DNA from: Setoptus koraiensis
Lineage: Eukaryota > Animalia > Arthropoda
Length of the DNA stretch: 64,000 nucleotides
NCBI GenBank assembly: GCA_048013815.1
Contig: CM106585.1
Span: forward strand, 16,058,001 to 16,122,000
Direction of reading: 5' to 3'
The position numbers and the translations under genes are program-made. Numbering within the stretch: the stretch's first letter is position 1; every line of letters starts with the position of its first letter. The notes under the pieces are model-generated. The model was not told the DNA's origin, made no database searches, and saw only the letters and a list, made by a program, of their open reading frames with translations. Shown here piece after piece: positions 5,977-48,444 of this stretch.

Positions 5977-6137
<161 letters not shown>

Positions 6138-23142: not shown

Positions 23143-24850
23143 GTGAGTTTTTTCATTTTCAATTCAATAGCCAATAATGAGTGGAGGCAAATCAATTGCA
23201 ATCAATTGAGTTGTTGGTCTTTTGTAGACGAAACCAAAGACGAGAATAGCTGCCCGGCCGCTTGCCGTTGAACGTTGATCTCTCGAGAGTTGCGAGTCAG
23301 AAGGTCGGCGCGGCTTGATGAACTTGCAGCAAAAAGACAATATGTCACTAGGGTTACTTTCGCCCTCTGCTGCTGTCAATACGACAGTTATATATATATA
23401 GCGCGCAACATTGGAGCACTGGACATGGCACAAACACAACGGGGCAACCCAGATCAATTGTTGCGACTTTGTATTTGTGGCCATTGTGACAAGTGGGCCA
23501 CATTATTATTATTATTATTATTATTATTGCTGTTGTTATTATTATGCTGATCGGTGTGCGTTCGGTGTGGAGCTCATCAATGGCCAGTTATTTCGCCATT
23601 GATGAGCCATCGAGTGTGTACGCACTGTGACAAATGACAATGCCAGCGTCAGCTGACCAGCATCTTTTGACAGGCCCACCAATGACCAATGTCACTGTCA
23701 CTGCTGTCACATTGACAAAGAGCCCTGGTGACCAGTGGTCACTGTCACCTGAGTGCCGCACACAACAGTCTGTTTGTGCGCCGTGGGCAGCTTGATTGCG
23801 CAGCTTGCGTCATTTATGCAAATAAACACACACACACACACACTCACATTGTGACACTGAAAACACTGTTGCGCAATGGTAGCGACACTCAACTGACCAA
23901 CTGGACGCCAACGAGTTTCAAACTGGCCAATTAACTGGCTGGAAAATAAACAAAATTTCAAGTGAGCGCTTGCAAATATTTGTCTCAGTAATTGTTTTAT
24001 GTCGTCCGAGCAGCCGACCGAGTTAGCTCGGCATAGTGCATAATTGTTGCTGGCGCCATTGTCGCAGCCATGACACAACACACGACACAACACACGACAC
24101 AACACACGACACAACACATAATGTGACACATGATGTGATACATGATGTAATATTGTGCCGCATTCCAGTGCAGTATTACATCATACATTATGCAGCGTGC
24201 GGTGTTAGACATCGCATGCAGGTGAGCACATATCTCACACTGGTTAGACACTGGTGCCCAACTAGTTATATTTAATTGCATCTTGGTGTTGTGAGTGTGT
24301 CCAATGGCAGCGCTCAGTTAATTTGATTAGAGCTTAGATTAGATTTGAGTGGAATGCGCATTGCGTCATATCTGTGGGGCTAACAAGTTTTGAGAGGTCG
24401 CAAAGACTCTGCCAAAGACTCTGCCAAAGACTCTGCCAAAGAGACGACAAACGATGAAAGTAAACAAACAAACGGCCGTGAGACAGATCCAGTGACAGTA
24501 GACAGAGCGAGACACAGTGTGCGGGGGAGAGCGAGAGTTCTCATCGAGATATGACCAACAAGACGCCAGCGATGACCCAAATGTCATCTGGTGCAAACAA
24601 ACTGCATTCAACTCTCTCTGTCTCTCTCCGTGTGCGACTTTCCCGATCACTGACAGTTCACAATTTGAACTTCATAACTCGAAATATCCCAACATCGTCA
24701 GTCACATATGTATGTATAGCTATAACTGTCATTGGGTAGACGTATTGTCACTTTCTTCTCACACACTCTGGCTGTCGTTACATTTATACATTGTTTGTAT
24801 TCTCAGCGGCTCGGGCTAATTGGCTCAGCGACGAAAATGAGCTCGCTCCC

Positions 24851-29942: not shown

Positions 29943-32900
29943 GAACAGTACACAACGAGGAAGAAACGGCTCAGCAAACTTGACTTGAATCATCCTCATG
30001 TGGCACCTATTCAGCCGCAACATAAAAACTTTGCCACCAACCAAGTGCCCACTACTACACCGGCGCCACCTCTCGACAAATTGTTCACCGGAACAGTGGA
30101 TAGTGGGCCCGCAGTGGCGGATATTCGAGAGCCGTTGCAGCCGTTGGATATATCGCAAGCTGCAGCGCACCACGAGGGCCCACGAACGGCAGCGCCATCA
30201 GAAGCCGAAGTAGCAGCAGCAGCAACGACAGAGACGGCAGAGCGATCAACTAACAGTATAGTGCCAAACAAGGATTACAACGCAACCGGAAGTGAGCAGC
30301 ATGCTAACAATAATGTCAACAATGCGGCCGGATACACCAAGCACCGGTCGACGCCTAGCGACGGTGGCGATAATCAATTTAATTTTGCCTACGGCGATCA
30401 TTTGGCGGCCAGTAACGGCACTGCAACAAACAATGACCATGGCGCCATTGCGACAAACAACAAAACAAGTGACATCGTGCGATCCGGCGACCAGGGCCCC
30501 CCGCATCATCAACATCAGCAGCAACAAGTGTCCGAGGACTGGTCATCGGGGCAGCTGGAAGGGGGCTACTATCAGCACGACCATGGCGGACACACGACAA
30601 ACGGCAAAAGCGCCAACAACGAGCTCGATTTGGACAATTTTCCACTGGATGGGTACCAATTAGCCGAAAGTGACCAGTCCGCTACCATTGCGGATAAAAA
30701 TCGCCATCAACGGACACCGGACGACGCCGACGACGACAACATTGTGTCCTCGAGCTCGTTTGCCTCCATGGAAAGGATTCAACCGACAACGTTCGTCAAC
30801 AAAAGCCCACAGTTTGTGTCCAGCGATGGCCAGCGAAATACCACTTCCGGCCCATCGAACTCAAACCTGACCCTGGTTGGCGGCCGTGCCGGGCCCGAGT
30901 TGATACCCATCACGAAGCCGTTGGGCGCGGTAGAGGGCGCTGATGATGATTCAGAAAGTTATAACAGTGCCAGTAGCACCCATTTGCCCCACTATTACCC
31001 TAGCTCCCCGACATCGGGTTATCACGATCTAGGCGGCTTCACAATGTCGGCCACCACCGAGGCCACAAATCCGTGGATACCCACCACTCTAAGCGTGGAC
31101 AATGGCGCCAGCACAACGTCCGACGGCCAACTAGACGGCGAAACTGAGCCGGCCCCAACGGGCGCCAACACCGACGTCATGCTGTCTCAATCCTCTGAGC
31201 GCGCATCGTCATCGTCCCAACTAACGTCTGTCCAGCTGACCACTTCCGGTCACACTTCTGTCAGCAGCAACAGCGGTGGCGCCATGCAACACTGGCCGCT
31301 CTCAACGGTGAGCCCGGCCGCCCACGACGATCAGTTGGGCTTCGATCAAATCACTTCTCCAGTCACGACGCCCGTCAGCGCCCTCGTAGACTCGCCCAGC
31401 GTACCGGCGTATGTCGGCGCGCCCTCTAGTGAGTCAGCGACAACAACCATGCTGAGCAATGACATCGCCACAGGCTACAACAACGGATCGGCCATCAGCA
31501 ACTTTTGGCCCGGCGGCTCGGGCAGCGGTGATGCAAAGGCGCACGATGCGACTCGTATAGCGGGCCAAAACACTTCCGGTTCGGCGACAACACAACCCAG
31601 TTGGTCATCGCTGGACATCAGCGGCAACGATTCTGTCAGAAATAGTGATCACGGCGACAATTTGCTCATCGCGATCGGCTCTCAGCCGGTGTCGGCCAGC
31701 GACACTCAGTCGAACGGGACCCGGGCGGCCAGTGGCGCCGACGGTGCGGCCACCACGACCAGGCCAGACGGCGGGCAGCAGCAGCCGCCACCGCCCACAG
31801 AAAGTGACAGTTCCAATGATACGATCGCACAACAGAGCGGCTGGGTGGGCGACCGCAACTACTTGCCCGTGGCCGCCGTCACCACGCAAACGCCCGTGGT
31901 CGCTGCGAGCACGGGCGATCCGCTCAGCGGCGCCGGAAGCGCCGATCAAGACGAAATGGGTGTGTCGTCATCGTCGCCGCTAAGCGTTGTCGTGTTCGAC
32001 AACGGCGGCGCCGGATCGCCGCCGCCGTATAAGTACGCAGAAAATCCGCGTCACCTGCCCAACTATGGCGCTGTGTTCGGCGTGCGCAAATCGCCACTGG
32101 GCAACTCGTCTGCGTTGCAACTGACAGTTGCAAAGCAGCGATTTTCTGAGCCTCTGGCCATGGTGTCCGACAATGAGCTCGGCAACAACAGCAGCAGCAT
32201 CAGATCTCAGAGGGCGCCGGCGGCGGGCAGCGACCTCGGGCCGGACAGAGCGCCGAACTCGGGCGCACGCAATGAATGGCGCGAATCGTTGTCGCCAGTG
32301 CATCACATCAACAATCTGGACAGCGGCGGGGGCGCCGGTCTCGACACGGACACGTATAAGACGTCCACTGGGGCAACAACTGGCGTTGAGCAGCAGCGAC
32401 AGCTGGCGACAACAAGCAACAACAACAATGTCAACAACAATGACGATCGGGGGGCCTCGATTACGCAATCGAGCACGCTGGATCAGCTGGACAACACCGG
32501 AAGCAGCGAGCATGACGGCAACAAACAATTAGCGCCACCGTCGCCCGTAGGCGACGACGACGATTTTGAGCCATCTGTTGGGCCCGATGAAGCGGCCAAC
32601 AAGAAGCGCCAGCAATACTATTTGAGAGAACCGGAAGTAGCGGTTGTGCCGGCCAGCAGCAACAGGTCGGCGACGCCGGAACAGGCTAGACAGAGCAAAC
32701 AAAACAAGACACACAAACATAGCTATGTCTGGGGCAAGCGCGCCTCCAACAGTACCGACCGGAAGTGGACCGGTGAGTCGGACAAATCAGCACTGCGACC
32801 AAATCAGTTAGGCTCAGCGCAGGCCGACGCCGCTCGGCAATCCGCTTACGACGAAAGCTCAAGCGGCTCCGACCAGGCAAACGCTGACCATCATCACAAG

Positions 32901-35900
32901 TCGCCCTCATCGGGCGACTATTTTGTCGGGGGAAATAACGCGGGACAGTCACTCGTTCAACATTCAGACAGCAATAATCTGGACGGTAGTTTTTACACAA
33001 ACGATTGGAAGGGAGTCAGCACCTTAAACAATTACTACAATGTGTCAAGTGCGGCCGAACGGCACACCCACTCGGACGACACCGGCCCGCTGTCGGACTC
33101 GTCCGGAAGTGACTCGCCGGCCCGCGATGCAATGGCGCATCATACCACACGAGCGCCAAGCTCGCGACTTTTAAGCAGTCGCGTGCATGTGTCGGGCGAC
33201 ATAATTATATCGACAGCGTCGCCATCGTTGATGGCCAACAAACAGTGGCAGACCAAACAAAAACCGGCCACAAGGGGGCGATCGCACAGCGATAGGCTCG
33301 ACGAAGACCAGGCCGGCCCGACGGCGGCCGAACCGGACGAGCCGGGCCCCAACGAGCCGACCAACAGGCAGTATAGTAAACAGGTTGCAACAACAAGTGG
33401 CGACGACAACGCCGACTATGATCAGGTCTCGCCGGACAGTGACGCGCACAAGCGACCGAGACAAGAGAAGCGACAAGCGAATAAGAACCACGGGACCCGT
33501 GACTCCGGTCAGCATTCCAAGGCGGCCCGAAAGAAGCACAATCGCCTTGTGAGCGGCGACGAGGAACAGCAAGCCGGCAACGGGCCCGATGGCGCCGATC
33601 ATCCGGACGAACGAGGCACGCCCAATCGGGGCCCGACAACCAAACAATCGCTCAGCCGGCCTCAATCCAGCAATCAGTATCCAAATGGCGAGCGCAAATA
33701 CAACAGGAAACAACAGGAAGCAGATTTTGCGGGCCGGGACGCCGACCAACGGGCAAAGCAGCATCGGGCCAACGAGTTCGAACTGAGCAGCACCGGACCG
33801 GGCACCGCAGTCAGGTCGCCCGGCAGCGCCAACAGCAAGCAGCAGCAGCACCATAGTGAGGCACCCGGTGACACGCCCACCGGCCAGGAGTGGTCGGCGG
33901 GCGATCAAACGGAGCCCGAATCGATGGGCACCAGGCAGAAAGAAAATCACAACTACGGCTCTCAGACCATTGGCGTTCGTCTGGAGCCCAAGCTGCCGCC
34001 CACTATAAGCACGCTGCGCATTGTCAACGACGACTTTGCCCGCGAAAATCCGTCGCCGGCCCGCAGGCCGCCGTCGACATTTCCGGCGCCCGCACTGGAC
34101 GAAATGAATCTCAAATTGAAACAGCTGGCGGCCGAAAACAAGCAATCGGAGGCGCGTCGCCAGGCTCGCCAGCCCCAACAACATCAGCCGAGGCGCCACC
34201 TACAACGGGCCAACAGAAACGACACCAGCGGTCGGTACGGGCAACCGCCGCACCACACCGAGATGATGCACCGCGACGAGTCGGGATCGCAGCCCTTCAA
34301 GATGGCCGCGGCCGGAAACAAGTACCTGTTGCCGCGGCATCAGCTTATGCAGCACAACCCCTTTCAGCAGCATCAGTCGAGCGCGCCCTATCCGCAGCAC
34401 AGCGTGCACTACGGCCACTGGCAACCGGGCGGCCAGCCGCGACCGGTGCCCGGCGGCCAATATTACCCGGCCATGCAGCACAAGCAGCACCAGTCGCAGC
34501 AGTTTTACGGTGCGCCGGCGGCGCCAAACAGTCGCCCGCCGCATCACTACGGGCACCCGCAACAGCCGGCCCGACAGCCGCTTGCCAGCTACATGCACCA
34601 AGCGGACAACTCGCAAATCTTTCAACAATCACTGCAAATGGAATCGGACTTCCAGCCCATCATGGGCCAGCCGCACCAACACCAGAATGTCGTTCAGCAC
34701 AACAGAACCAACCACAACCGCTATTATGCGGTTGCGCACAACAATCCGCCGCAGCACCCGTCCGCGTCCGGCCCGACCATGGTTCAGTACAATGTGAGCT
34801 CGCTAGAGCCCATAACCGTGTACAATCCGCAGCCCACCTACGAGGAGTATCTCGCCGTCCAGGCGGGTCCTCCGCAACAACCAAACCTAGAGCCGTCGGG
34901 TCCTATCGGCCAGCCGTCGGACGACGACAATCGGGCCAGGTATCACGCCGCAAGTCAGGGCACCCGATTGAATCAAGGCTACGATCAGCAGCAGACCTTC
35001 ATGAGCGCCGGCTCGCCCGATCGGCAGTACTCTCAGATTCGCGATCCGCCGCCCAGATACCCGATGGCCGATGTCGGGCCGGCGCGGCCCGTCTACGGTC
35101 ACAGCCAACAGCAAGCGGACAGCCAGCGCTACCAAATAGCGACCATATACGACAACAAACCGCAAGTGGATCAACAGGGCGAACAATCGGTCAACAACGA
35201 CAACAGGTGGTCGGTGTCCACATTGCCCTACCCGCCGGCTGCGCCCCGCGCCAAAGAATACTTCACCCAGTACAAGGTGCTGGAATCGGGGCCGGCGCCG
35301 CCGCCGCCGCCCATGCTACTCAATCAAAGTCCCGCAGAAACGATCTTCGGACCGGCTCCGCCGGGCCAACAATTGGCGGACGGTCAGCCCGTCAGATATG
35401 TCCCGTCAACGGGCGCCAATATGGCCGGTTACGAATATGCAAACGAATACAGTCAGCCGATCGACCAACAACAACTATCGCACAACAACAAGCAACCAAA
35501 CATCTATCAAGCCTCGGCAACAAATATCGCCGACAAGCCGCCGCACGACCACTACCCCTTGCCCGTGTATCACCAGCAGCCGCAGCAGCAATACCCGTAC
35601 CCGGCACCGCCGCAATACGACGCGCCGAGGCACCGCCCGCCACAGTATAAGCACCAGCAGTCTTACCAGCAGCAGCAGCAGCAACATATGAGCAAGGCGC
35701 CGCCTCAATACCAGCCGATGCACCATCAACAGCAACAACTGGGAGATCCGGGCCCGAGCGGTCAGGCGGCCGACTACAGCGGTCAGCATCAGCCGGTTGA
35801 GCACACGGGTCTGTCGTCCAACCGGAACATTGTGCAACAGAACAGCAACCACAGCGGCAATAGAGCGCGGGATCCGCAATCCGCCGCGTTGCCGCCCACC

Positions 35901-38900
35901 GACGGCGCCCCCAAGGTCAACGAGCCGGCCACTGTCACCGGGCCCAATCAGCTGTTTTGGGAGGCTGCGGTTGCGGCGGCCGCCGCCGCCGACGAGGCCA
36001 ACAACCCAGGTCAGCAAAGCCGCAAAAGCAGGGCACCGCCCTCCAACGGTCACCATCCGCCCCAGCATAGGGTTCCGCCGCCAATACCGAACGGAGAACT
36101 GCCGGACCAGCCGCAGAATAATCCGATGCCTACGAGCAGCGGTACCCGAAGTTCCTATCAGCGCCCGGCCCAGTACAAGCCGCACAACAATAATGCGGTG
36201 ATGCACCAGCGCAGGCCAATGAGTTACCCCTATCAGACTGGCGCCTCGTCTAGCGTTTCGCCCTCGCTGGCCGGCGGCACCGCACACACCAACGGACACG
36301 CCTTTGCCGGCTTGCTGAATATGGCCGCTCTGGAGCGCTCTCTGTTGCCGCATTACCTGGGCTCCGCCAGTGTCATGGCGCCCAGCTTTCTGCCCATGGG
36401 CATGTCCGGCCCGATGGACCCGTTGGATTCGCTCAATCAGCAAGCGTTCAACATGGCCGAAGCCAGCCAATCGCTTCAGGCCGACGGACAGCAGCAGCCC
36501 GTAGTGTTGCCCGGCGCGTCGGGTACGTCGTCCAGCGGCGACGAGCTGCCGCCCCCCGCGTATCAATTGCAACAGGCGGGCCATTTTGCGGGCCATTCTC
36601 CCGCGGAGATGGCCGCCGAGGCGTACCGGCAATTCAATTTGCAACAACAGCAGTCCATTGGTTTGAACGCGGCCAGCATGACCAACGGGCCCGGCCAAGG
36701 CACCGCCAAGCACCCACAGATCGCGTCCGGGTCGCTGAGTGGGGTCGATCTGCCGCTGGCCAACCCGACCCTTGTGAGCGATCCCTTCGGGTGGCCCTTG
36801 GCGTACGGAAGTGACGCCGCCAAGGCGCTGATGAAGATCAATCACGTGGCGCCAGCGCCGAGCTATTTGTTGCCCGCCGGGGCGGGCAAGAACGGAGCGG
36901 GTGCCGTGGGTTCGTTGTCGCTCGAATCGGGCCGCCATCAGACCATGATGTCGGCCGCGGCGGCCGCAACGGCCGCTTTCAGCGCAAACGCACTCGGTCA
37001 GCCGCACGGCAGCTATTTCGATCACCAGATGGACGCGGGTTCGGGCCACTACATGATCTCGCCAGCGCCGCCCATGATTCATCATCACGTGCATCATCCG
37101 CAGCCGGGCGTGTTGCACGTGCCGCTGTCTACCCGACCGCCAACCACCCGACGACCGCTGTTTTGGGGACTTTTCCGGTCGCGACATCGCCAAACGAAGC
37201 GTCGAACCGGCGCCACCAACCAAGCCGACACAGCGTCATCATTGGCCCCTCTGAACAACACAACGGCAATCGGGGGCAACCCATCGGGGGCGACAAAACG
37301 ATCGGCTAGGCGCAAGCGCAACGTGCTGAGCACAATATGGAACAGTTTCAACGGGGCCGCCGGAAGTCGGTCCACGCCCGCCAACGCTAGCCAACTGGCG
37401 AACCATGGCAAGACAATGGTGCAAATGGGCACCAATTTGGGCCAAAATCAAAACATTGTCAACAATCAGCCCATTTTGCATGACTTCGAATCGTTGCTCA
37501 TGTTCGACGACGATCAGCAGCGGCCCGTGCAGCTGAACGGGATGCCGCCAGTGACGGGCACAAACCGGAATGGGCCCTCTACCGGCCCGACGCCGCTCAG
37601 AACCAGCAACGACAACCGGCCGCAGCAGCTGCAATTGTTGCGCGACCAAGACACCCAGATACAGAGCTACACGCGCGACATGATGAGCGATTCGGGTTTC
37701 AACATGAAAGACATCGAGTCGCTAGAGCGGGACATTCTCAGCTCGGCTCTGCAAGTCAACGCGAACGCACACGAAACCGGAAACGGAAACAAGCAAGCGG
37801 CCACGATGATGTCGCCGGCCACGGCCGCCTCCGTTCAGTCGGCGTTCATTCATCACGAGCCCGCTGTCGGCAACATTGAGCCGCCCGTCAATGTTCCGCC
37901 CCAATACAGGCAGCAGCAGCAAACGCTGGCCACGGTGCCCAGTTCGCCCGGCGAGGCACTCAAAAGTTTCTCTCGGGCCATTCTCAGAACGTCGGGCGAG
38001 TCGCTGTTGAATTTGCGCAAGGTCACCAATCAGATATTTGCGCCCAAATTGTCCGCCCAGATTGCAAATCCCAAATCGCCCGTGCCCACAAATCACTCGC
38101 AAATGGGCCCCGAAGAACAACTTCTAGGCACAAATTCTAGGGATTTTTCAGCCAGGCAGCAGCACATGCAATTCAACAACAACACGCCAGCGGCGCCCCA
38201 CTTCAATTTGCCCCTCATCGACATCCACACAATGCCCAACAACAAACCCTTCACTCACTTACAGCAACAGCTGACCGCCTTGCCCGCCGAAAGTCTCATG
38301 TTCAAGGTGGCCACCGGAAACGGCGCCCAGGACAGTCTGTCCGTTTTGCCGCTTCATCTTGATCTCATGACGCCGGCGCCGCCGCGACCCGTAATAGTAA
38401 ATTCCGTCAGCCAGGAGGCGGTCAAATATCAGCCACAACAGGTGTACCCGCGAATGGGGCCCAAGGCCAGCGTCAAAATCAAACAGCTCGACAATATGAC
38501 GCCGCCCGCTGCCGGCACGGGATCGATCGGGCCGGGCACGACGTCGTCCATAATGATGCAGCTGATAAACTCGATGGCGGCAGCGCCGCAGCAAAGCGTT
38601 GCCGCCGCAACCGGCCCGTTGGTGAGCGGCCTGCTGGAAAGAAAAACCAATTATATTCTCAATCCGCACAGGAGCACCGAAATCTATCGGCCCGTGCGCC
38701 TGATTCGACCCGGCCAACGGCGACCTCCAAATCGGCATCGGGTGCCCGCGTTCGGCATGTCGTCGGGACCCGACGACACCGCAGACCTGTTGGGTGTGAC
38801 GAGTCAACAGGTGGACCACGAAATGCCTCTCGTCGCCAGCAACAACATGAGCACAGTGGCGGCAACAAGCAAGTTTGACAACATTGGCGCCTCTAATGCG

Positions 38901-41060
38901 ACCAGCGCAATACCACCGGAAGTGACGCGCGATACCATGCGGGCGGCCGCCAATCAGCGCCACGATCATCTGATTTATCAGACCGACCATCAGGCCATGA
39001 GTGAGCACAACGAGCCGGAATCTACTACGCAAATAAAGCACACGTACCGGCGCAATCGGCACCATTATCATCCGCCCGGGTATGTGCACGGTCGTCACCA
39101 TTTGGCGCCCCATCATCATCATCAGTATCCGCTGATGAGCTCGCCCAGGGGCCAGTACAGTTTGACGGGCCCCAATCAGCGTCAGATCATGGAAAACAAC
39201 GGCAGGCACAATGCTGCAACAGCAGCGGCGGCCCTCATGCTCGCCAGCCAAAAGTCCGGGCCTCACAGGGGCCCGCACAAGGGCTCGCAACCGGCTCAGC
39301 GGCAGCAGCAGCGCGGCGAGACAACGACAATCAGCGACGACATGGATAATCTTCATTCGGCGCAATCGTCAGCCCACGATCACATAACCTCGTTGGACAA
39401 CAACAACAACGCCAACAACAACAACCTGTTCAACAACAAACTCACCAGTGACCCGAGCACGGGCGACTTTTTGCCCTCGGGGCACCACATAAGCTCGCAT
39501 TCAATGTTGCCCTCGCATCACCAGCAGGACCACACCTACACCATTGTGCCGACGGGCGCCACGGGTAGCGGCGGTGCGCCGGGCGGTAACGGCGGCGCCG
39601 GCAATGGTCAGTATCGGGCCATCACTCGGGACACGTTCACCACAATAAACGACGTGCCCGTGCCCCACACAGAATCCGCCGTGTCGGACCTGATGCTGGC
39701 CGATCAGCTGGGCTCGGCCTCGTCTCTGAGCGAGCCCACTTCGCCCACCAGCCAAGTGGGCGCCCCTGGCGACCAGGTAACGAAAAACTTTCCAACAAAC
39801 TACAACTATGACAATCATCATCATCACTACATGCCAGCGCAGGCCACCAATCAACCTGCCGGCTTTGCGTCGGCGGGTCACTATCACCATTCGCCGCTCA
39901 TACCCAGATATTTGACCATGGCCAACAGGTTTCGTCAGTCGTTGTATCAAAAACTGAAACACAGCAACCTGTTGCCGCGCCCCTTCGTTCAGCTGGCCCT
40001 CAAGCCGGCACTCATGTCCGCGTCGCCCAGTTTGCGTTACCCGAAATTTTTGCCCGGTCAGGGTATAATAAACGCCAACGGTCAGTTGCAGCACCCGAGC
40101 TTGCACCATTATCCGTCGTACCTGTTGCCCGCGATGCAAGCCTCCGCGCAGCAGCTAGAGGCGCACAACGACCCGACCGCCGCCGGCCAGTCGGGTTCGT
40201 TCTTTGTGGACAACATGGGCCAGTTGCAAGGCTCGGGCCCGAGTGGGGCCAACGGGGGCGCCGGCGACAACAGCGCCAGCTTTCATTACCAGTCTGCCGA
40301 TGGCGACCCGTCGCTGTTGAATCAGCACGAGGCAGCGCAATTGTTGCAGCATCATCATTCGCTTCAAGTTGCCACTTCTAGCCAGCAGGAGCCCACTATG
40401 AGCATAAGCCAGCAACAGTATCAGCAGCAGCAACAGCACATGTCGGGCCAGGCCGGATCCGCGGTGCTGATGGGCGGCGGCGGCGGTAGCCCGCAATCCG
40501 CAGTTGATGCAGCCGACAGTGGCGAACTGATGGAACTGGACCCGTTGACGGGCCAATTGCGCCCGCAAAGCCACTCACTGGCGGACGGATCGTCGGTCAT
40601 GCTCAACGACACAATGCCGTCGCAACCGCATCAGGTACCCATAATGCACCAGTCGTCCCAGAGTGAACAAATAGAGACACTGGAGCCGTATTCAGAGCAA
40701 ACCGGAAGTCAGAGCAACGACTACAACGGCAACAACAACAACATTCAGCATATCAAGCAGCAGCAGCATCATATCAACGGCGACGACCGGTACAACCAGG
40801 CCTTTCAGCAGCACCACGCCTTGCTGAAGAGTGACCATCATCATCACCATCATCCGCATCAGCAGCAGCATCAACAGTTGGACGATGGCCAGCCGACGGA
40901 CGAGCATCACAGCGAGCACGCTTGGACGACAAGCTCGCAAATGTTTGCCGACATGATGTCCGCCGATCACCATCCGAGCCACTACAATCACAGCAGCAAC
41001 AACAGCAGCGCTGCTGACCATTTGAACAATCGCAACATTGACAACTATCGCACCACCACC

Positions 41061-41092
<32 letters not shown>

Positions 41093-44000
41093 CAACAGCG
41101 TGATTCAAGACAGCCAAAGCGACAACTACGACAACAACACTCTGCACTACCATCACAACAACAACAACAACAACAACAACAACAGTTTGACAAACGTGGG
41201 CAGCGCAAACGCGCAACGCCAGCGTCACATGATGCTGATAAGGCCAAATCACACGAGACTCGACATTGTCGAGATGATGCCCATTGTCGACAACGGTCAA
41301 CAAATGAACAACAATGTCAACCTGTCCGACGATTCCGGCCCGACGGATGCATCGCGCGACAACGACGCGCCCGACCAAGCGAGCGAGCAGCAGCAATCGT
41401 CCAACTACCAGAATCACCAGAACCACCAGAGCCGCCACAAGAACCAAGATTACCACATGGTTCAGGCTGCGTCGGCCAGCGCCGAAACGGGCGCCACTCC
41501 GGACGGCCAACCGGACTCTAGCGGCGCTCAAACAGATCAATCGGCCAAAAACACACCAAACGACAGCTCAGAGGCGGACCCGGAACCGGAAGCAGAGTCA
41601 GCGGCCGATCAGCAGCAGCAGCAGGAACAGCAACACGATTCTCAGTCGGGTCAACAGCAGCAAGTGTATGAGGTGAGCCAGGCACCCGCTTCGCAACAGC
41701 ACCAGCACCAGCATCAGTCCCAAGGCGGGTACGCTCAGAATGGCGCCCAGGAGGACCCAAACATCGTGTACGGACGACAGCCGGGCATGTTGCTTGTGAT
41801 GAAGCAAAATGGAGACCAAACGAGCGAGCCCTTGCAGCGGCAACCCGCGGCCGGCATAGAGTACGATTTCAGACCCGTGTCGCCAGTCGTACAGCCGGCC
41901 CGCAACAGACCGCCCGCCAACGCGCCAATGTATCAATCGACAAAGCTCAGCAAACAACATTCAACAGACAGTGGCTTCGCTGGCGACAGTGGCGACACAA
42001 ACGAGCCCAACAGGCCTGTCGCCACTGACACTCACGAGGCCTCTTTTCGGCCGCTCGTTCCCCTGGTGACGAACCCCTTGAGTTACTTGCGATCCAATCA
42101 AATGCACGGCAACTCGAAGCAGCACCGCAACAACGCAATCAATTTCAAACTGGCCAACTACAATCACAACAACAACAGTAGATCTTCCACTAGTGGCATC
42201 AACGAGGAAACAACAACAATTCAGCAGCCAGATACAGATGCCGGCACACAAAACCAGATACCTAGCTACACACTGATTGACCAACCTGTCGTAATAAGAG
42301 GCTCCAATGATGCCGAGTCGGGCGTCATGATGCCCGCTTCCGTTACTAGTAGCACGGACGATCAATACTCTGTGTTGGCCACCCCAACAAATGTCAACAA
42401 CATTACATCGGCGACACCCACGGCAACTCCTAGTGCCATTACAACAGTGACAACATCACCGGATTCATCATTAATTAACGCAAAAAGATTATACAACAAT
42501 CAGCAGGCAGCAACGGTATACGATGCTGCAACAACTGCAAGCAAACCAAAGCTGTTTGTAATTAATAACGCCAGACCAATAGTTAATATCATCACGGCCA
42601 GTGGTCAGTCGTCTAGCAACAAGACCAGTATCGGTGTTGATGGCGACGACAGCGTGAGCGGCACGGATCACAATCAAACAGTGATACACATCAAGCAAAC
42701 CAAGAAGCGCCCAATTAAGTACAAACTCATCAGTAACAACAACAACAACAACGTCAGACAGCAGCAGCACAATAACGCGAAGCATCTGGTTTCAACTAAA
42801 ACCAACGATCTAGTGACCACTACTGACCAAAATACACCAAAACAAAGCTCGCTGGACAGCAGCTCTCATACGGTCGGCAAATCTAATGCGCCAACGAAAC
42901 AATCGCCACCCAAATACGCACAACATACCTACAGCAATCACAATACTCAGGTGAGGGGTCATCATGATCCCGACAATATAAAGAATCACAATTTGAAGAG
43001 CACCAATACGGGCTCGATGGGATCTCAATCGCAACGCCACGCGACAACTGCCGCCCATTTGAATCAGCGAAACGGGCACAATGCAACCACCAACCAATCG
43101 GCCTCAATGCAACAACAACAACAAATTAGCAAACAATTGGCCAAATCTAAAATCAGATGGCAAGGCATGATTGCGGGCGAGCACGGCGGCGCCAATAACA
43201 ACAATAAGCAAAACACTAGCAGCAGTAGTGGCAGCAACAGCAATTTCACAACAATTGGCGCAACAACACCTCAGACAACCACCACAATTGTGTTGGACAG
43301 TCACGAGGTTGCCGCCTCGAGTCACCAACACAAATTGAATGGCGCCAATACCCCAACAACAGTGTCGGTTTTGAGCAACAGGAAGGCAGAGCTGATGCAA
43401 CAACAACAGCAGCAACAGCAACATGATCAGGCGGCCGGATCAAATCCTTGGACAACCATAAGCAACAACATACCTGCAATAGTGAGAATGACCAAAACAA
43501 ACACAAACGTGCCACTTCAGTCTAATCAACAGGAAGTGGTTGTGACCAATTCAACATCGCCTATGACAATGATGATGATGATGATGGCCACTACATCGGC
43601 ACAAACGCCACAGCAGAATCAGCAGCAGCAGCAGTCAACAGTTAGCCATGTCGATCAAATGAACAATGTCGATCATGTGGACGGCAACCCAATGAGCCAA
43701 GACAACGACAGCCAATTGAATCAATTGGCACTTATCGAGCAACAGAGATTGCTGTATCAGACAAACAACGACACAACATCGTTGAAATCAGCCGATAATC
43801 AGCTCAGACAAAACAGTCAGTCATCATATCAGGAGCCAATGATGACCACCATGTCTAACAATATGGAAGAGGTCACTCAATTGCATAGACCGTATGCTGC
43901 CGCTGCTGACCACTCATTCATATCACCTGTGCCAACCACTACTACTACTAGCACCACTACTACTACTAGCACTACTACACCGCCACCAACTACAACCAGC

Positions 44001-44666
44001 ACTTCTACTACTACTACCAGTACAACTACTAGTCCGGCCAATAAAGAAATGAGAGTGTTCTCCAGTTACAGTGGAGGTCTGAGGCACCTTCAACACCAGC
44101 CGGTCACCTTGAGAAGCCAACAATTGATGCAGGCGGCCTCGGCTGCTCTGAAAGCCAGAACTCGTTCATCTAGAACGGCAACTACATCATTTAGGTTATC
44201 AAATTCAAGTGCCCTCACTAGCTTGATAGCCAGCAAGGCCAATGGCGCCGCAAGCATCAGCGCCAGCCTAGATAAACAGCCAAACAAGCCGACCAACTTC
44301 CATCATCACAGCTCTATAATCAAACGCATAGACGACGGAAGTCACATTGGAGAGGCCATCACGACAGAGGAATCTCCTACATTGCCACTAACATCGCCAC
44401 TGTCCAGTGCCGATGCCGCACCCACAAACAATGAGCCAGATACTAGGTGGTCACCCAAGGATTTTCAGCACTATCTCCTAGATAAAAAACAAGATAATGA
44501 ACAACAATCCATGATATCTGGCTTCACTCCATCTATTGTATCATTCATAATACGCCCGGTCATAACAACAACCACAACTACCACGACAACACATAAACCA
44601 GACAATAGGATGAGACTCGAGGTTTCCATGGGCACCGATCAACAACAATTGATCTTAAAAGAATAG
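29943..44666 (+). CDS. Exon 3 (14.7 kb, 4,907 aa) of a giant secreted, intrinsically disordered Q/S/N/H/P/T-rich protein (~5,141 aa total); no recognisable domain
   Basis: A 14.7 kb stop-free frame, with a TGTAG acceptor at 29942 opening it in phase 0 (EQYTTRKKRLSKLDLNHP...), matching the exon 2 donor. Stop TAG at 44664-44666. Confidence 0.9.
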
Positions 44667-44772: not shown

Positions 44773-47115
44773 CTATTTCTTCGTTCTGGATATACTTGAC
44801 TGTTGTAATACTTTTCTAGATAGACGCATCTGGCCATTGGCAGCATCGCGTCCATAATATTTGACTTGAATTTGTTGGCCTACCTCTAGTCCCAGCGCGC
44901 TAGGGTGCTTAACTGGTCTAATGTCTAATTGTCTTAGAGGTAAAAGGGTTGGGGTCATCTTTGGATACATGGTGACCATCACGCCATGATCTTTGATTTC
45001 CGTTATAGTGGCCGAGTATATAGCATTAAACTCTAGCTCAGTCTCAACGGGATCATTCTCAATGAGACTCTTGATGTATTCCTCAGCTTCATCCATGGCA
45101 GCTTGATTTGGAGCGAACACAGTAAAGATATTATCATTGTTTATATTTTCAGAATCATCATTGTCAGTATAAGCGCTGCCAGTCACTCTTACACCAATTT
45201 CATGCATTAACTTCTTTATATTGCAACCACCAAATCCTAGGAACTTGGATCTCTTGTGTGGTGGTATGAGGATTGACTTAATAACAGGATGATTTTCTTT
45301 CCTTTCTTCTCTCGGTGTTTTTATCACATCCTCCATAATGTTGAGCACTTCAATCTTAGCAATGTGTCCCCTCCGGATGGCTTCGCTTAAAATATTCAGA
45401 GGCAGACCATCGCTCAGTTTGACATCCAGCTGAAAGGCAGTAATTCCATGTCGAGTTCCGGCCAACTTAAAATCTATATCTCCAACAAAATCTTCCAAAC
45501 CTAATATATCAGTGAGAAGATAATATTCTAAATCAGGCACTTCGTCATCTTTTTTCTCAAAGTAAGGCCAATCTGTCTGATTTCGTTGCTTGTTTGAGTT
45601 TTCAATATCATAAATCTGGTCTAAGTTACTTAATAAACCGATAGCTACACCCGCAGCTGGCTCTGATATTTTCACTCCAGCGTCCATCAGAGCCAAACTA
45701 CCAGCACAAACACTGGCCATAGAGGAGGATCCGTTCGATTCTAAAACTTCACAATTTAACCTGATAGTCATTCCAACATCGGATGGCACTATGGGTCTCA
45801 GCGCTCGTTCAGCCAAGTTACCATGACCTATCTCTCTACGGCCTATTTGAGTCTTTCCGGTTTCGTTAGTAGCGTAAGGTGGGAATTCGTAGTGCAACAT
45901 GAAGTTTTTATCTTTCACACCACCAGTCATAATTGTCATAGCGTCGTTCCTGAATGCGGCATCTAATGAATCATATGTACAAGAACAAAATACTTGTGTT
46001 TGACCTCTCTGAAAAATTCCTGACCCGTGTAGTGGTTGAAATAGATCCACGGCACATGATATCTTTCTTAGTTGGTTCAATTTCCTACCATCACATCTAA
46101 TTTCTTCGCTTTTTAATTGTTCTAGGTAAATTTTACGGAATAACTTCAGAAATGCAAAATTAAGCACGTTGGGATCAATAAGTGGATCCTGTTCTTTCAT
46201 CATTTCGAGAGCATCTCGTCTGATTGCTTGCATCTCTTTGTCCCGAGATACCTTATCGTGGTTGACGTTCCGAAGCGTATCGGTCAATCTAATCTTACAC
46301 AAGTTTTCATAGGTTTCTAATTGTTCTGGACTGAGACTATATTGCTGAGTGATGGGTTTTTTGGTTCGACCGTGTGACTCTTGTAGATTTCTTATATCTT
46401 TTATGATTTTTTGGCACTCTTTCACGCCTAGCTTGAGGGCTCTGAATAGATCAGGTTGCATAATAGGCTCATTACAGCAACCATCGAGCATCATGATATT
46501 ACCGCTTTCGGTGGCTGTAAGTATTAAATTCAATTTGCTCCGAGACATTTCTTTCCTCGATGGGTTAACAATGAGATCACCTTCTATCATGCCCATTCTA
46601 ACAGCACCAACAGGTCCATTCCAGGGTATATCGGACAGAGCCAGGCTAGCTGATGCGCCGTTTATGGCTAGAACATCTGGATCGTTTTGGCCATCCACGG
46701 CCAGTAAGTTACATATAACTTGGGTTTCATTTGAGTAGCCTTTGTAGAATAGAGGACGAATAGAACGATCAATCATGCGGCTAACGAGTGTTTCTTTTTC
46801 TGTGAAACCGAGCTCTCTACGTAAATGTGTCGTGGGGATCCTTCCAGCGGCAGCCGATTTCTGTCTGTATTCCACTGTGAGTGGAACAAATCCAGGACTT
46901 GATCGAGAAGACTTGTCACTAACAGCGGTGACTAGGACAGTCGTCCCTTCTCGTCGGACGGTGCAGGAGCCATCAGCAAATTTGGCAAGTTTTCCTGTCT
47001 CTATACAAATGCTACTATTGTTGGACTGAGAGGTCGTCGTGAACGATCTGTGAAGCCAGATTCTCTTGAGCCATGAGGTCGCGATACGCGATCTTTGAGG
47101 TGCCCTGGTCGCCAT
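44773..47115 (-). CDS. PNPT1: Polyribonucleotide nucleotidyltransferase 1, mitochondrial PNPase, intronless, 780 aa
   Basis: IETGKLAKFADGS, FVPLTVEYRQK, LVSRMIDRSIRPLF, RCDGR, HGSGIFQRGQTQV, RREIGHGNLAERAL, LESNGSSSMASVCAGSLALMDAGV, DFKLAGTRHGITAFQLD, plus KH and S1 domains. Confidence 0.97.
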   Translation of the reverse strand: MATRAPQRSRIATSWLKRIWLHRSFTTTSQSNNSSICIETGKLAKFADGSCTVRREGTTVLVTAVSDKSSRSSPGFVPLTVEYRQKSAAAGRIPTTHLRRELGFTEKETLVSRMIDRSIRPLFYKGYSNETQVICNLLAVDGQNDPDVLAINGASASLALSDIPWNGPVGAVRMGMIEGDLIVNPSRKEMSRSKLNLILTATESGNIMMLDGCCNEPIMQPDLFRALKLGVKECQKIIKDIRNLQESHGRTKKPITQQYSLSPEQLETYENLCKIRLTDTLRNVNHDKVSRDKEMQAIRRDALEMMKEQDPLIDPNVLNFAFLKLFRKIYLEQLKSEEIRCDGRKLNQLRKISCAVDLFQPLHGSGIFQRGQTQVFCSCTYDSLDAAFRNDAMTIMTGGVKDKNFMLHYEFPPYATNETGKTQIGRREIGHGNLAERALRPIVPSDVGMTIRLNCEVLESNGSSSMASVCAGSLALMDAGVKISEPAAGVAIGLLSNLDQIYDIENSNKQRNQTDWPYFEKKDDEVPDLEYYLLTDILGLEDFVGDIDFKLAGTRHGITAFQLDVKLSDGLPLNILSEAIRRGHIAKIEVLNIMEDVIKTPREERKENHPVIKSILIPPHKRSKFLGFGGCNIKKLMHEIGVRVTGSAYTDNDDSENINNDNIFTVFAPNQAAMDEAEEYIKSLIENDPVETELEFNAIYSATITEIKDHGVMVTMYPKMTPTLLPLRQLDIRPVKHPSALGLEVGQQIQVKYYGRDAANGQMRLSRKVLQQSSISRTKK

Positions 47116-47646
47116 GTTTTCAAAATAATAATTTAGTTTCTTATGGGCTCAGAGGGAGCTGGAACAATCTGGGCGATGCGGCCGATATAAAATTGTTGCG
47201 AGAACATAGAATGGACGGATAAAACTTGACTACACATGCTTTTGTAAACACAACATTCCGGTACTTATCTGCACATGTTCGAATGCATGCAGAACGTGGC
47301 GCCAGTTACAATTTGCTTATAGCCCTCAGGGTACAGGGTTTGTCCGCGGCACATGTTATGGGATTTTATCACCCAGCAGAAAAATGGGACCGTAAAAAAA
47401 ATTGTAACTGGCGCCAAATCCTATACGAACATGCGCAGACTAGTACCGGAATGTTGCATTTATATGAGCATGTCGTCGAATTTTATCTGTCTAATATTCT
47501 CAGATTAATTTTATCTCTCTCACATTCGTCGAATTGTTACAATCGAAGCTCGTGAGGATTATCAATTACCTTTGGAAAAATCGGATAAATATTTTGAAAA
47601 CATGGCGACCAAGGCACCCCAAAAATCGCGTCTTGCGACCTCATGG
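47071..47646. promoter_or_regulatory. Imperfect ~576-bp palindrome spanning the PNPT1/eIF3g bidirectional promoter and both start codons
   Basis: Outer arms 47071-47127 and 47590-47646 are reverse complements at 52/57. Inner arms 47297-47314 and 47399-47416 match 18/18. Revcomp of 47251-47281 vs 47426-47456 matches 28/31. Confidence 0.9.
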
Positions 47647-48444
47647 GTCGATCAGATGAAAGAGCACTACGCAGCAGATCATCTACCACCCAAAACGGAG
47701 ACTATTAAAGGCGACACGAAGGAGATAGTGGAATATAAATTTGATGAAAATGGAAAAAAGACCAAAACAGTAACAACTTACAGAATTATCAGGACACCAA
47801 TAACAGCTCAGATGTTGGCTAGGAAAAATTGGAAAAGTTTTGGTTCGACGGCGTCCGACGAAAGTAGCAAGCCCGAAACCCAGGACGAAGAGATTATTAT
47901 GCAATTCGTCAACACCAAGGATCCAGAGGGCGAAACTAAGGCCGAAGATGACCCCTGGACCAAGGCCAAAGCTGTCAATCAAAGCCTGTTCAAATGTCGT
48001 GTTTGTAAAGGTAATCACGCAACAGCACAATGTCCGCTCAGCGACAGACTGGACATTACACTTAGGGATGATCTCGTCTCCGCCGACGGGGCTGGTGCTA
48101 AGATTGGTGGAAGTGACAAGTACCAGATACCAGCAAGTAGAGGTGGTGAAGCTAGCGGCCGAACCAGAGAGACCATGAGCTCTAGAATCAGAGAGGATCT
48201 GAACACTGTCCGTGTGACAAACTTGCCAGGCGAAATACAAGATGGTGATCTGAAAGATCTCTTCCAAACTTTCGGAAAGATTACTAGAATATTCTTAGCC
48301 AAAGACAAGTACACAGGAACATCCAGAGGTTACGCATTCGTCAGTTTCGATTGCCCGCAGAGCGCACTGTTGGCCGTTAATACTTTAAATGGTTACGGTT
48401 ACGCGAATCTTATCCTCAAAGTCGAAGTTGCAAAGCCCTCATGA
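47602..48444 (+). CDS. EIF3G: Eukaryotic translation initiation factor 3 subunit G, intronless, 280 aa
   Basis: SWVDQ N-terminal motif, KEIVEYKFDENGKK, ARKNWKSFG, Zn knuckle CRVCKGNHATAQCP, and a C-terminal RRM (VRVTNL...IFLAKDKYTGTSRGYAFVSF...LNGYGYANLILKVEVAKPS). The true start is taken as ATG 47602 rather than TTG 47572. Confidence 0.96.
   Translation: MATKAPQKSRLATSWVDQMKEHYAADHLPPKTETIKGDTKEIVEYKFDENGKKTKTVTTYRIIRTPITAQMLARKNWKSFGSTASDESSKPETQDEEIIMQFVNTKDPEGETKAEDDPWTKAKAVNQSLFKCRVCKGNHATAQCPLSDRLDITLRDDLVSADGAGAKIGGSDKYQIPASRGGEASGRTRETMSSRIREDLNTVRVTNLPGEIQDGDLKDLFQTFGKITRIFLAKDKYTGTSRGYAFVSFDCPQSALLAVNTLNGYGYANLILKVEVAKPS

What the first reader, a model, noticed from the sequence alone, without database searches (positions are those of the whole stretch)
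47071..47646. Palindromic bidirectional promoter: PNPT1 and eIF3g face away from a ~576-bp inverted duplication
Seen: the outer arms (12 nt of UTR plus 15 codons) match 52/57. Inner arms aaattgtaactggcgcca match 18/18, and cgaacatg[t/c]gcaga..agtaccggaatgttg match 28/31. Partial matches continue outward (agcatgt, ttttatc.gtc). All arms share a centre near 47355 around an ~84-bp unique core. The zone between the inner and outer arms is barely alignable. Inference: an inverted duplication of one gene's promoter and 5' end created a mirror-image promoter driving an unrelated gene. The patchy identity implies selection on core elements and/or intrachromosomal gene conversion between the arms. The two mRNAs would begin with near-identical sequence and could be co-regulated transcriptionally and translationally.
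Basis: partly seen in the sequence, partly recalled or inferred. Interest (0 to 1): 0.9.

Follow-up and report, generated by a model that had tools for sequence, protein, structure and literature searches.

The report
PNPase gene wears eIF3g's front
In this gall-mite genome, the mitochondrial RNA-degrading enzyme PNPase starts with a mirror-image copy of its neighbour eIF3g's promoter region, leader, start codon and first 15 codons, which shows how a gene can get a new front end from the gene next door.

Summary
Between the divergent, intronless PNPT1 (44773-47115, -) and eIF3g (47602-48444, +) genes lies a nested palindrome. Its arms are about 250 bp (47066-47314 and 47399-47651) around an 84-bp unique core. 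The local alignment scores 139 against 18.8±2.6 for shuffles. Identity is patchy: perfect runs of 22, 18 and 15 nt, reached in 14 of 20,000 column shuffles.

The direction is resolved. The N-terminus MA.K..Q.S..ATSWVD is ancestral to eIF3g in related mites. The 27 full-length eriophyoid PNPT1 relatives read at the N-terminus start MD[RK]VA... (a few M[EVI]…) and lack it. So eIF3g's upstream region, leader, ATG and 15 codons were copied in inverted orientation and fused in frame to PNPT1. The copy holds PNPT1's only usable start codon.

An 11-kb DNA contig from a public run spans the palindrome, and the arms have diverged, so mis-assembly is excluded.

An RNA-like contig starts at 47508. That puts eIF3g's transcript start inside the duplicated segment, but in its poorly conserved zone. 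The two mRNAs would therefore be alike around the AUG, not at their 5' ends.

Co-regulation and gene conversion remain untested. First-stage notes of this scan list seven other 5'-end capture cases elsewhere in this genome; I did not check them.

The parts
44773..47115 (-). PNPT1 (mitochondrial-type polynucleotide phosphorylase), intronless, 780 aa. Codons 1-15 are the captured eIF3g-derived segment.
   Evidence: ORF. Pfam RNase_PH x2, RNase_PH_C and KH. 56-61% identity to eriophyoid PNPT1. The next Met is at residue 114, inside the conserved domain.
47602..48444 (+). eIF3g, intronless, 280 aa. This is the donor gene.
   Evidence: ORF. Pfam eIF3g + RRM_1. Its N-terminus is conserved in relatives.
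47066..47314 (-). Left arm: the inverted copy. It now carries PNPT1's upstream region, leader, ATG and first 15 codons.
   Evidence: Global and local alignments. PNPT1 relatives lack this N-terminus.
47399..47651 (+). Right arm: the source copy. It carries eIF3g's upstream region, leader, ATG and first 15 codons.
   Evidence: The ancestral eIF3g N-terminus is shown.
47315..47398 (.). 84-bp unique core, the spacer between the arms.
   Evidence: No Rfam or tRNA match.
47106..47127 (-). Perfect 22-nt block across the PNPT1 start codon (-12 to +10). Its mirror is at 47590-47611.
47590..47611 (+). Perfect 22-nt block across the eIF3g start codon.
47297..47314 (-). Perfect 18-nt inner block AAATTGTAACTGGCGCCA, about 182-199 nt before the PNPT1 ATG. 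Candidate transcription-factor site (GGCGCC core).
   Evidence: The CTGGCGCCA 9-mer occurs 8 times in the window against 0.5 expected.
47399..47416 (+). Perfect 18-nt inner block, about 186-203 nt before the eIF3g ATG. Together with the next 3 bases it reads as the E2F-like TTTGGCGCC on the other strand.
47251..47265 (-). Perfect 15-nt block AGTACCGGAATGTTG (left copy), within arm I2 (47234-47284).
47442..47456 (+). Perfect 15-nt block AGTACCGGAATGTTG (right copy), within arm I2 (47423-47473).
47508..47601 (+). Inferred eIF3g 5' leader. The RNA-like contig of run X6 begins at 47508. This zone aligns only weakly with its mirror (47116 to about 47214).
   Evidence: 782-nt contig, depth 31, starting at 47508. 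The word shares of X6 and X7 fit coverage from about 47500 to the stop codon only. That these runs are RNA is an inference.

Best explanation
In an early-branching eriophyoid (gall/rust) mite lineage, about 250 bp of eIF3g was copied in inverted orientation. The copied piece comprised the upstream control region, the roughly 95-nt leader, the start codon and the first 15 codons. The copy was joined in frame to PNPT1 at about its codon 16, leaving an 84-bp spacer between copy and source. PNPT1 has since been transcribed and translated from this mirror copy. The intergenic space consists of nothing but the two arms and the core, and the copy holds PNPT1's only usable ATG. The captured peptide MATRAPQRSRIATSW is basic and has no acidic residue. 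It now forms the tip of PNPT1's mitochondrial-type presequence. Most of the copy has since decayed. Three upstream blocks (18, 15 and about 14 nt) kept their sequence and their distance to the ATG in both arms, and so did the start-codon context (22 nt perfect, 57/65 overall). The most likely reason is that these blocks are the working parts: factor-binding sites, the initiation context and the coding sequence. What is shown: the duplication, its direction, the in-frame fusion, the assembly support and the clustering of identity. What is inferred: promoter function of the left arm, the cause of the patchiness, mitochondrial targeting, and the molecular route. The route is probably break repair or replication template switching onto the neighbour's opposite strand (fold-back / MMBIR-type).
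For: Palindrome: (score 139 against 18.8 ± 2.6). Direction: eIF3g relatives at 55-60% identity begin MAAKTQQRSKFATSWVDTMKEHH, and even a non-eriophyoid mite and a copepod keep the SWA[DE] motif. The 27 eriophoid PNPT1 relatives whose N-terminus could be read (the F. setiger entry is truncated) start MD[RK]VA..L.RVV or close variants (a few start ME, MV or MI) and have no such segment. Lineage-specific adjacency: eIF3g in L001 and L002, and PNPT1 in L003 and L004, have other neighbours. Only usable start: the next Met is residue 114, beyond the conserved ETGKLAKFADG motif. Presequence-like composition: 6 K/R, 0 D/E and 12 S/T in the first 38 residues. Assembly: an 11,134-nt contig of run X2 spans 46900-47820 with one SNP at depth 108, and four runs from four studies hold 92-96% of the sampled words. 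Transcript start inside the duplicated segment: the X6 contig starts at 47508. Clustered identity: the sum of the three longest perfect runs (22 + 18 + 15) was reached in 14 of 20,000 shuffles. The blocks sit at matching distances from the two ATGs. Placement: the window falls inside the eriophyoid clade (100/100), outside the 28-row clade containing Aceria, next to Fragariocoptes.
Against: There is no transcript evidence for PNPT1, so its start site is only inferred by symmetry. Whether X6 and X7 are RNA runs is inferred from their coverage pattern; the two raw RNA runs I laid held no reads of this organism. No relative closer than about 60% protein identity was available, so the event cannot be dated and selection cannot be separated from gene conversion. 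The 15 shared codons differ at only 2 synonymous positions while the leader beside them is near saturation. Protein-level selection alone does not explain that. The nearest named relative's contig (F. setiger, L005) starts inside PNPT1, so its 5' end could not be compared.
Confidence: 0.8

Rival explanations
1. The origin is the same inverted duplication, but the well-preserved patches are kept alike by gene conversion between the arms (concerted evolution), not by selection on working elements.
For: The outer arm is 88% identical with only 2 synonymous differences in 15 codons, while the adjacent leader has almost lost its similarity. Arm-to-arm conversion is well known in larger palindromes (established knowledge).
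Against: The longest perfect run is 22 nt and the blocks are short islands in diverged sequence. That is poor substrate for homologous conversion. The islands lie where function is expected (ATG context, upstream blocks at conserved spacing). The 3 amino-acid differences (K4R, K8R, L11I) persist inside the best-preserved block.
Confidence: 0.2
2. [quoted passage not shown] The inverted segment would be a micro-inversion of the 84-bp core, or a larger rearrangement that also brought PNPT1 next to eIF3g. It did not arise by fold-back template switching.
For: The PNPT1-eIF3g adjacency is lineage-specific. The staggered-break model and micro-inversions with inverted duplicated ends are described in Drosophila (PMC7584159). 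A first-stage note of this scan proposes an inversion for another cassette in this genome (untested).
Against: The copies are only 84 bp apart, so the inverted segment would have to be tiny. The core holds no recognisable remnant of a PNPT1-type N-terminus (my reading of the ORFs). Synteny is poorly conserved among these mites in general, so the new adjacency says little.
Confidence: 0.15
3. The direction is the reverse: the segment is native to PNPT1 and eIF3g captured it.
For: None beyond the symmetry of the structure.
Against: The eIF3g N-terminus, including ATSWVD, is conserved across eriophyoid relatives, and the SWA[DE] motif is kept in more distant arthropods. PNPT1 relatives lack it.
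Confidence: 0.02
4. Assembly artefact (chimeric fold-back reads), or a foldback/MITE-type transposon whose terminal repeats happen to abut the two genes.
For: Palindromes are a known artefact class, and foldback elements do have such shapes.
Against: The arms are diverged and indel-rich, not perfect. Both arms are in frame with working genes. The X2 contig spans the region, and four studies hold it. No further copy of the arm blocks occurs in the 64-kb window beyond one 3-mismatch hit. The metagenome scan gave only single hits, none with the two inverted copies; the two of these loci that could be compared with the window matched over only 25 nt. The arm content is the conserved coding sequence of a host gene.
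Confidence: 0.03

Closest known systems
Chimeric genes made by partial duplication that recruits another gene's promoter and 5' end (described mainly in Drosophila; my own knowledge, not tested here)
   Same: A piece of one gene (promoter, leader, first codons) is copied and fused in frame to an unrelated gene, giving it a new start and new regulation. The donor stays intact.
   Different: Here the copy is inverted and sits right against its source. The result is a palindromic head-to-head promoter pair with an 84-bp spacer. The recipient is an essential single-copy housekeeping gene, not a spare duplicate.
Inverted duplications at inversion breakpoints (staggered-break models; PMC7584159)
   Same: Short inverted duplicates of gene-flanking sequence arise as by-products of rearrangement or repair. 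Sizes of tens to hundreds of bp match.
   Different: In that model the two copies flank the inverted segment, which is usually kilobases to megabases long. Here they are 84 bp apart and one copy was put to use as a gene's front end.
Fold-back, MMBIR/FoSTeS or ODIRA-type inverted repeat formation (PMC4689423)
   Same: Inverted copies separated by a short spacer, the geometry expected when a DNA end or nascent strand switches to the opposite strand nearby.
   Different: Those models were tested on large amplifications in yeast. Here the event is a 250-bp evolutionary fixation, and no junction microhomology could be demonstrated.
Bidirectional promoters of head-to-head gene pairs (animals; my own knowledge)
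   Same: Divergent genes less than 1 kb apart (486 bp between ATGs) with control elements in the shared interval.
   Different: Ordinary bidirectional promoters are not mirror duplicates and do not give the two proteins the same first codons.
Mitochondrial presequences acquired from other genes by duplication or exon shuffling (plant nuclear copies of transferred mitochondrial genes; my own knowledge)
   Same: A targeting N-terminus is borrowed from another gene.
   Different: The known donors are themselves mitochondrial proteins. Here the donor is the N-terminus of a cytosolic translation factor that merely has a suitable composition, and only the tip of the presequence was replaced or extended.

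Membership tests
Inverted (palindromic) duplication | Two homologous arms in reverse-complement orientation, sharing one centre, with similarity beyond chance | tested here: met
   (139 against 18.8 ± 2.6).
Chimeric gene by 5'-end capture | The shared segment is ancestral in the donor gene | tested here: met
   eIF3g relatives start MAAKTQQRSKFATSWVD.
Chimeric gene by 5'-end capture | Orthologues of the recipient lack the segment | tested here: met
   The 27 eriophyoid PNPT1 relatives with a readable N-terminus start MD[RK]VA... or close variants (a few ME, MV or MI). The F. setiger entry is truncated.
Chimeric gene by 5'-end capture | In-frame fusion that supplies the recipient's start codon | tested here: met
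   Single ORF of 780 aa from the shared ATG. The next Met is at residue 114, inside the conserved domain.
Chimeric gene by 5'-end capture | The chimeric transcript is expressed from the captured promoter | not testable with these tools
Bidirectional promoter | Divergent genes with start sites less than 1 kb apart | tested here: met
   486 bp between the ATGs. The eIF3g RNA-like contig starts at 47508.
Bidirectional promoter | Shared elements give coordinated expression of both genes | tested here: inconclusive
   The RNA-like runs X6-X8 cover eIF3g (0.71-0.92 of words) but little or none of PNPT1. That hints at unequal output. The kind of run is not confirmed.
Concerted evolution of palindrome arms (gene conversion) | Arms within a species are more alike than orthologous arms between species | not testable with these tools
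   No relative closer than about 60% protein identity was found.
Concerted evolution of palindrome arms (gene conversion) | Long uninterrupted identity tracts | tested here: not met
   The longest perfect run is 22 nt, and identity over all columns is 70%.
Foldback / MITE transposon | Multiple dispersed copies | tested here: not met
   No other copy in the 64-kb window. Metagenome hits were single copies, none with the inverted pair; only two of those loci were compared further, and each matched over 25 nt.
Mitochondrial presequence | N-terminus rich in basic and hydroxylated residues, with no acidic residues | tested here: met
   First 38 residues: 6 K/R, 0 D/E, 12 S/T.
Mitochondrial presequence | Directs import into mitochondria and is cleaved | not testable with these tools
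   Needs an import or localisation experiment.
Structured RNA element or small RNA gene in the palindrome | A fold more stable than shuffles, or a match to a known RNA family | tested here: not met
   Fold z-scores were 0.13-0.44 for both leaders. The only Rfam hit is sub-threshold and lies in the PNPT1 coding region. No tRNA.

The most novel reading that the evidence does not exclude
This locus is one instance of a recurrent, genome-wide process in this streamlined mite genome. Genes that lose their own front end at a break or rearrangement in the tiny intergenic spaces would be routinely 're-headed' by a fold-back copy of the head-to-head neighbour's promoter, leader, start codon and first codons. 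That would couple unrelated genes to the same control elements and remodel N-termini, including targeting signals. First-stage notes of this scan list seven further candidate pairs in the same genome: AP-4/E2F, MPND/Fip1, TAF6/p47, clathrin/Hsp70, adenylyl cyclase/PAT1, POLG/OPA3 and MTERF3/MRPL13. Two of them carry agreeing follow-ups. I could not check any of them. The two eriophyoid genome papers I searched hold none of the words bidirectional, head-to-head or palindrom.
Probability: 0.4. Interest if true: 0.85.

Novelty: new variant of a known kind. Interest (0 to 1): 0.6.

Why it matters
This is a clean case with the direction resolved. An essential single-copy gene had its whole 5' control region, leader and start replaced by a mirror copy of its neighbour's. 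The N-terminus of a cytosolic translation factor became the tip of a mitochondrial targeting peptide. The decayed arms act as a natural mutagenesis experiment. What survived in both copies (three upstream blocks at fixed spacing, and 22 nt around the AUG) marks the likely working parts of a promoter in an animal group with no promoter biology at all. If the same process is frequent in this genome, as the scan's other notes suggest, it would be a previously undescribed route of gene and promoter evolution linked to extreme genome compaction.

Tried and rejected
(1) RNA reads to map the start sites. The two raw poly-A/oligo-dT runs offered under the same species label (X20, X23) held no reads at all, so that label is probably a host. 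This gave no test.

(2) Orthologous loci. The eIF3g loci L001 and L002 and the PNPT1 loci L003 and L004 come from relatives too distant for promoter alignment, and they have different neighbours. The F. setiger contig starts inside PNPT1.

(3) Other palindromic head-to-head pairs. None of 4 further pairs in the window and none of 4 pairs in L001-L004 showed one. The sample is too small to say anything about frequency.

(4) Structured RNA or small RNA gene. No fold signal and no Rfam or tRNA match.

(5) Metagenome scan with the 18-mer. It returned 18 single hits, none with the two inverted copies. The two loci I could compare with the window matched over only 25 nt. I take the hits as chance.

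(6) A remnant of PNPT1's original start in the 84-bp core, which would test the micro-inversion model. The + strand ORF there (MLWDFITQQKNGTVK...) does not resemble MD[RK]VA. Not informative.

(7) Naming the factor sites. The right arm reads as the E2F-like TTTGGCGCC, and the 15-mer contains CCGGAA/GGAATG (ETS- or TEAD-like). These are resemblances from memory only and were not tested.
Full report
**What is there.** Two intronless genes face away from each other. One is a 780-aa polynucleotide phosphorylase (PNPT1; 44773-47115, minus strand; Pfam RNase_PH x2, RNase_PH_C, KH). The other is a 280-aa eIF3g (47602-48444, plus strand; Pfam eIF3g + RRM). The 486 bp between their start codons, plus the first 45-50 coding bases on each side, form a nested palindrome. 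Arm pairs lie at 47068-47132 / 47585-47649 (65 nt, 88%), 47214-47234 / 47471-47491 (81%), 47234-47284 / 47423-47473 (51 nt, 82%) and 47297-47314 / 47399-47416 (18/18). All are centred at 47352.5-47358.5, around an 84-bp core with no partner.

Aligned as wholes, 47066-47314 and the reverse complement of 47399-47651 give 269 columns with 189 matches. That fits one duplication followed by decay. The best local alignment scores 139, against 18.8 ± 2.6 (maximum 30) for shuffles.

**It is not an artefact or a mobile element.**
- The arms are diverged and carry indels, and both are in frame with conserved genes.
- An 11,134-nt contig from public run X2 covers 46900-47820 with one SNP. That run may be this assembly's own source.
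- Four runs from four studies hold 92-96% of the sampled 31-mers of 46300-48400.
- The arm blocks have no other copy in the window apart from one 3-mismatch hit.
- A metagenome scan returned only single hits, none with the two inverted copies. The two loci I could compare matched over only 25 nt.

**Who gave and who took.** The two proteins share 13 of their first 15 residues: MATRAPQRSRIATSW in PNPT1 and MATKAPQKSRLATSW in eIF3g. The eIF3g proteins of about 50 related mites (55-60% identity) begin MAAKTQQRSKFATSWVDTMKEHH. Even a non-eriophyoid mite and a copepod keep the SWA[DE] motif. In contrast, the 27 eriophyoid PNPT1 proteins whose N-terminus could be read begin MD[RK]VA..L.RVV or close variants (a few begin ME, MV or MI), about 15 residues shorter, with nothing like the eIF3g start. 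So the segment is native to eIF3g and was copied to PNPT1.

A PNPT1 tree places the window's species inside the eriophyoid clade (100/100). It is an early branch next to Fragariocoptes setiger and outside the 28-row clade containing Aceria tosichella. In relatives neither gene neighbours the other, so the adjacency is specific to this lineage, although synteny is poor in general. The closest named relative gave no test, because its contig begins inside PNPT1 at ...GDTSVLVTAVS.

**What the copy does now (inference).** The captured ATG is PNPT1's only usable start. The next Met is residue 114, well inside the conserved catalytic domain that begins near residue 39. Everything between the two ATGs is arm or core, so PNPT1's promoter must lie in the copied arm, perhaps with help from the core. 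The first 38 residues of PNPT1 have 6 K/R, no D/E and 12 S/T, a presequence-like composition. The captured 15 residues fit this, whereas eIF3g turns acidic right after them. From codon 16 the PNPT1 sequence (LKRIWLHRS...) loosely resembles the relatives' native ..AKRLTRVV... This suggests that the capture replaced only the first few native codons and lengthened the presequence. That is a suggestion, not a result.

**Where transcription starts.** The two raw RNA runs I laid contained no reads of this organism, so they gave no test. A 782-nt contig of run X6 (depth 31) begins sharply at 47508 and runs into eIF3g. The word shares of X6 and X7 (0.91-0.92 of 47420-48444, but only 0.40-0.49 of 46300-48400) fit coverage of eIF3g from about 47500 to its stop codon and little else. 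That pattern is what RNA gives, not DNA.

I therefore place the eIF3g start site near 47500, about 95-100 nt before the ATG. But it lies in the poorly conserved zone. The layout of each arm then reads outward from the core as follows:
- conserved upstream blocks: the 18-mer at about -185 to -200, the 15-mer at about -140 to -160, CGAACATG[C/T]GCAGA between them, and an ATGCT/TTTTATC block;
- the transcript start;
- a leader that has drifted freely;
- the start-codon context (22 nt perfect, -12 to +10) and the 15 codons.

This explains the patchiness without special pleading. It also corrects the idea that the mRNAs 'begin' alike: they are alike around the AUG. The same runs show almost no PNPT1 coverage, so the two mirrored promoters are probably not equally strong today.

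**Selection or conversion?** The clustering of identity is real. The three longest perfect runs (22, 18, 15) sum to a value reached in 14 of 20,000 column shuffles. The alignment itself was optimised, so this figure is approximate. Among the 15 shared codons there are three amino-acid changes (K4R, K8R, L11I) and only two synonymous differences, while the adjacent leader is near saturation. Protein-level constraint alone does not explain that.

Several things could: constraint on the nucleotides near the AUG (initiation context, low structure), downstream promoter elements of a second and closer start site, or past gene conversion. I favour selection on working elements, at about 0.55 against 0.2 for conversion. 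The islands are short (22 nt at most), they sit at functionally sensible places with conserved spacing, and they still contain fixed differences. Only sister-species data can settle this. There is no sign of a conserved RNA structure in either leader (z 0.13-0.44) and no known RNA family or tRNA.

**How it arose (inference).** Inverted copies with a short spacer are the expected product when a broken end or a nascent strand switches to the opposite strand nearby and copies back. Fold-back priming and MMBIR/FoSTeS-type models are summarised in PMC4689423. The geometry fits. The 3' end of the plus strand at about 47065 (PNPT1 body) would be extended by copying the plus strand of eIF3g from about 47651 down to 47399, and then rejoined at 47315. 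An alternative is an inversion with staggered breaks, which leaves inverted duplications at its ends (PMC7584159). With copies only 84 bp apart, that would have to be a micro-inversion of the core. I found no evidence to decide between the two routes, and the junctions show no clear microhomology.

**Context.** The window's other head-to-head pairs, and four pairs in relatives' loci, are not palindromic. However, the scan's first-stage notes on other windows of this genome list seven further 'neighbour's front end captured' candidates. They also list several palindromic or duplicated bidirectional promoters and one note proposing a recurrent system. Two of the capture candidates have agreeing follow-ups. 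These are unchecked AI notes on DNA I could not read, so I use them only as a lead. If they hold, the phenomenon is genome-wide and much more interesting than one locus. The Aculops genome paper (PMC7738191) and the telomere-to-telomere eriophyoid paper (PMC11879100) hold none of the words bidirectional, head-to-head or palindrom.

**Verdict.** The claims of co-regulation, near-identical mRNA 5' ends and gene conversion are untested or need correction. As a single locus this is a new variant of a known kind, chimeric gene formation by partial duplication. It stands out for its mirror geometry, for replacing the front of an essential gene, and for turning a cytosolic factor's N-terminus into part of a mitochondrial presequence.

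Noticed in passing
window 29985-44666 (+): A single open reading frame of 4,893 codons. It is very rich in S, Q, A, P, N and T and has no cysteine at all (0 of 4,893 residues, against 22 Trp). It ends 107 bp from the PNPT1 stop codon. It was also flagged by a first-stage note.
   Followed up: partly
window 24050, 29239, 31103, 36847, 47297, 47408, 60437: The 9-mer CTGGCGCCA, the core of the perfect 18-nt inner arm, occurs 8 times in the window against 0.5 expected. One longer relative (TAATTGTTGCTGGCGCCA) lies at 24041-24058, just before an ATG. It may be a common factor-binding motif of this genome, E2F-like by resemblance only.
   Followed up: partly
L005:1-160 (Fragariocoptes setiger JAIFTH010000055.1): In the nearest named relative the contig begins inside PNPT1, about 45 codons in. 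The deposited protein is a 1,307-aa fusion with a zinc-finger gene. An assembly break right at the PNPT1 5' end could hint at a repeat or palindrome there too, but this is unknown.
   Followed up: no
L001:5524-5595: A tRNA-Pro(AGG) gene sits in the 748-bp interval between a kinase gene and eIF3g in a related mite's contig.
   Followed up: partly
window 5965-6137 and 7369-7476: Long trinucleotide arrays, (GTT)n and (CAA/CAG)n, on opposite strands 1.2 kb apart. They dominate the window's list of inverted repeats. They are low-complexity, probably poly-Q/N coding, and not a true palindrome.
   Followed up: no
window 47479-47499 and 47507-47527: A 28-nt-spaced direct repeat, AATTTTATCT(G/C)TCT.A.ATTC (86%), lies just around the inferred eIF3g transcript start. 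Both copies have weaker counterparts in the left arm, so the repeat predates the inverted duplication. It contains GATA-like AGATAA on the other strand.
   Followed up: no
window 47083-47095: Within the captured codons of PNPT1, the L11I change turned eIF3g's TCGCGTCTTGCGA into the perfect small palindrome TCGCGATACGCGA. Its significance is unknown.
   Followed up: no
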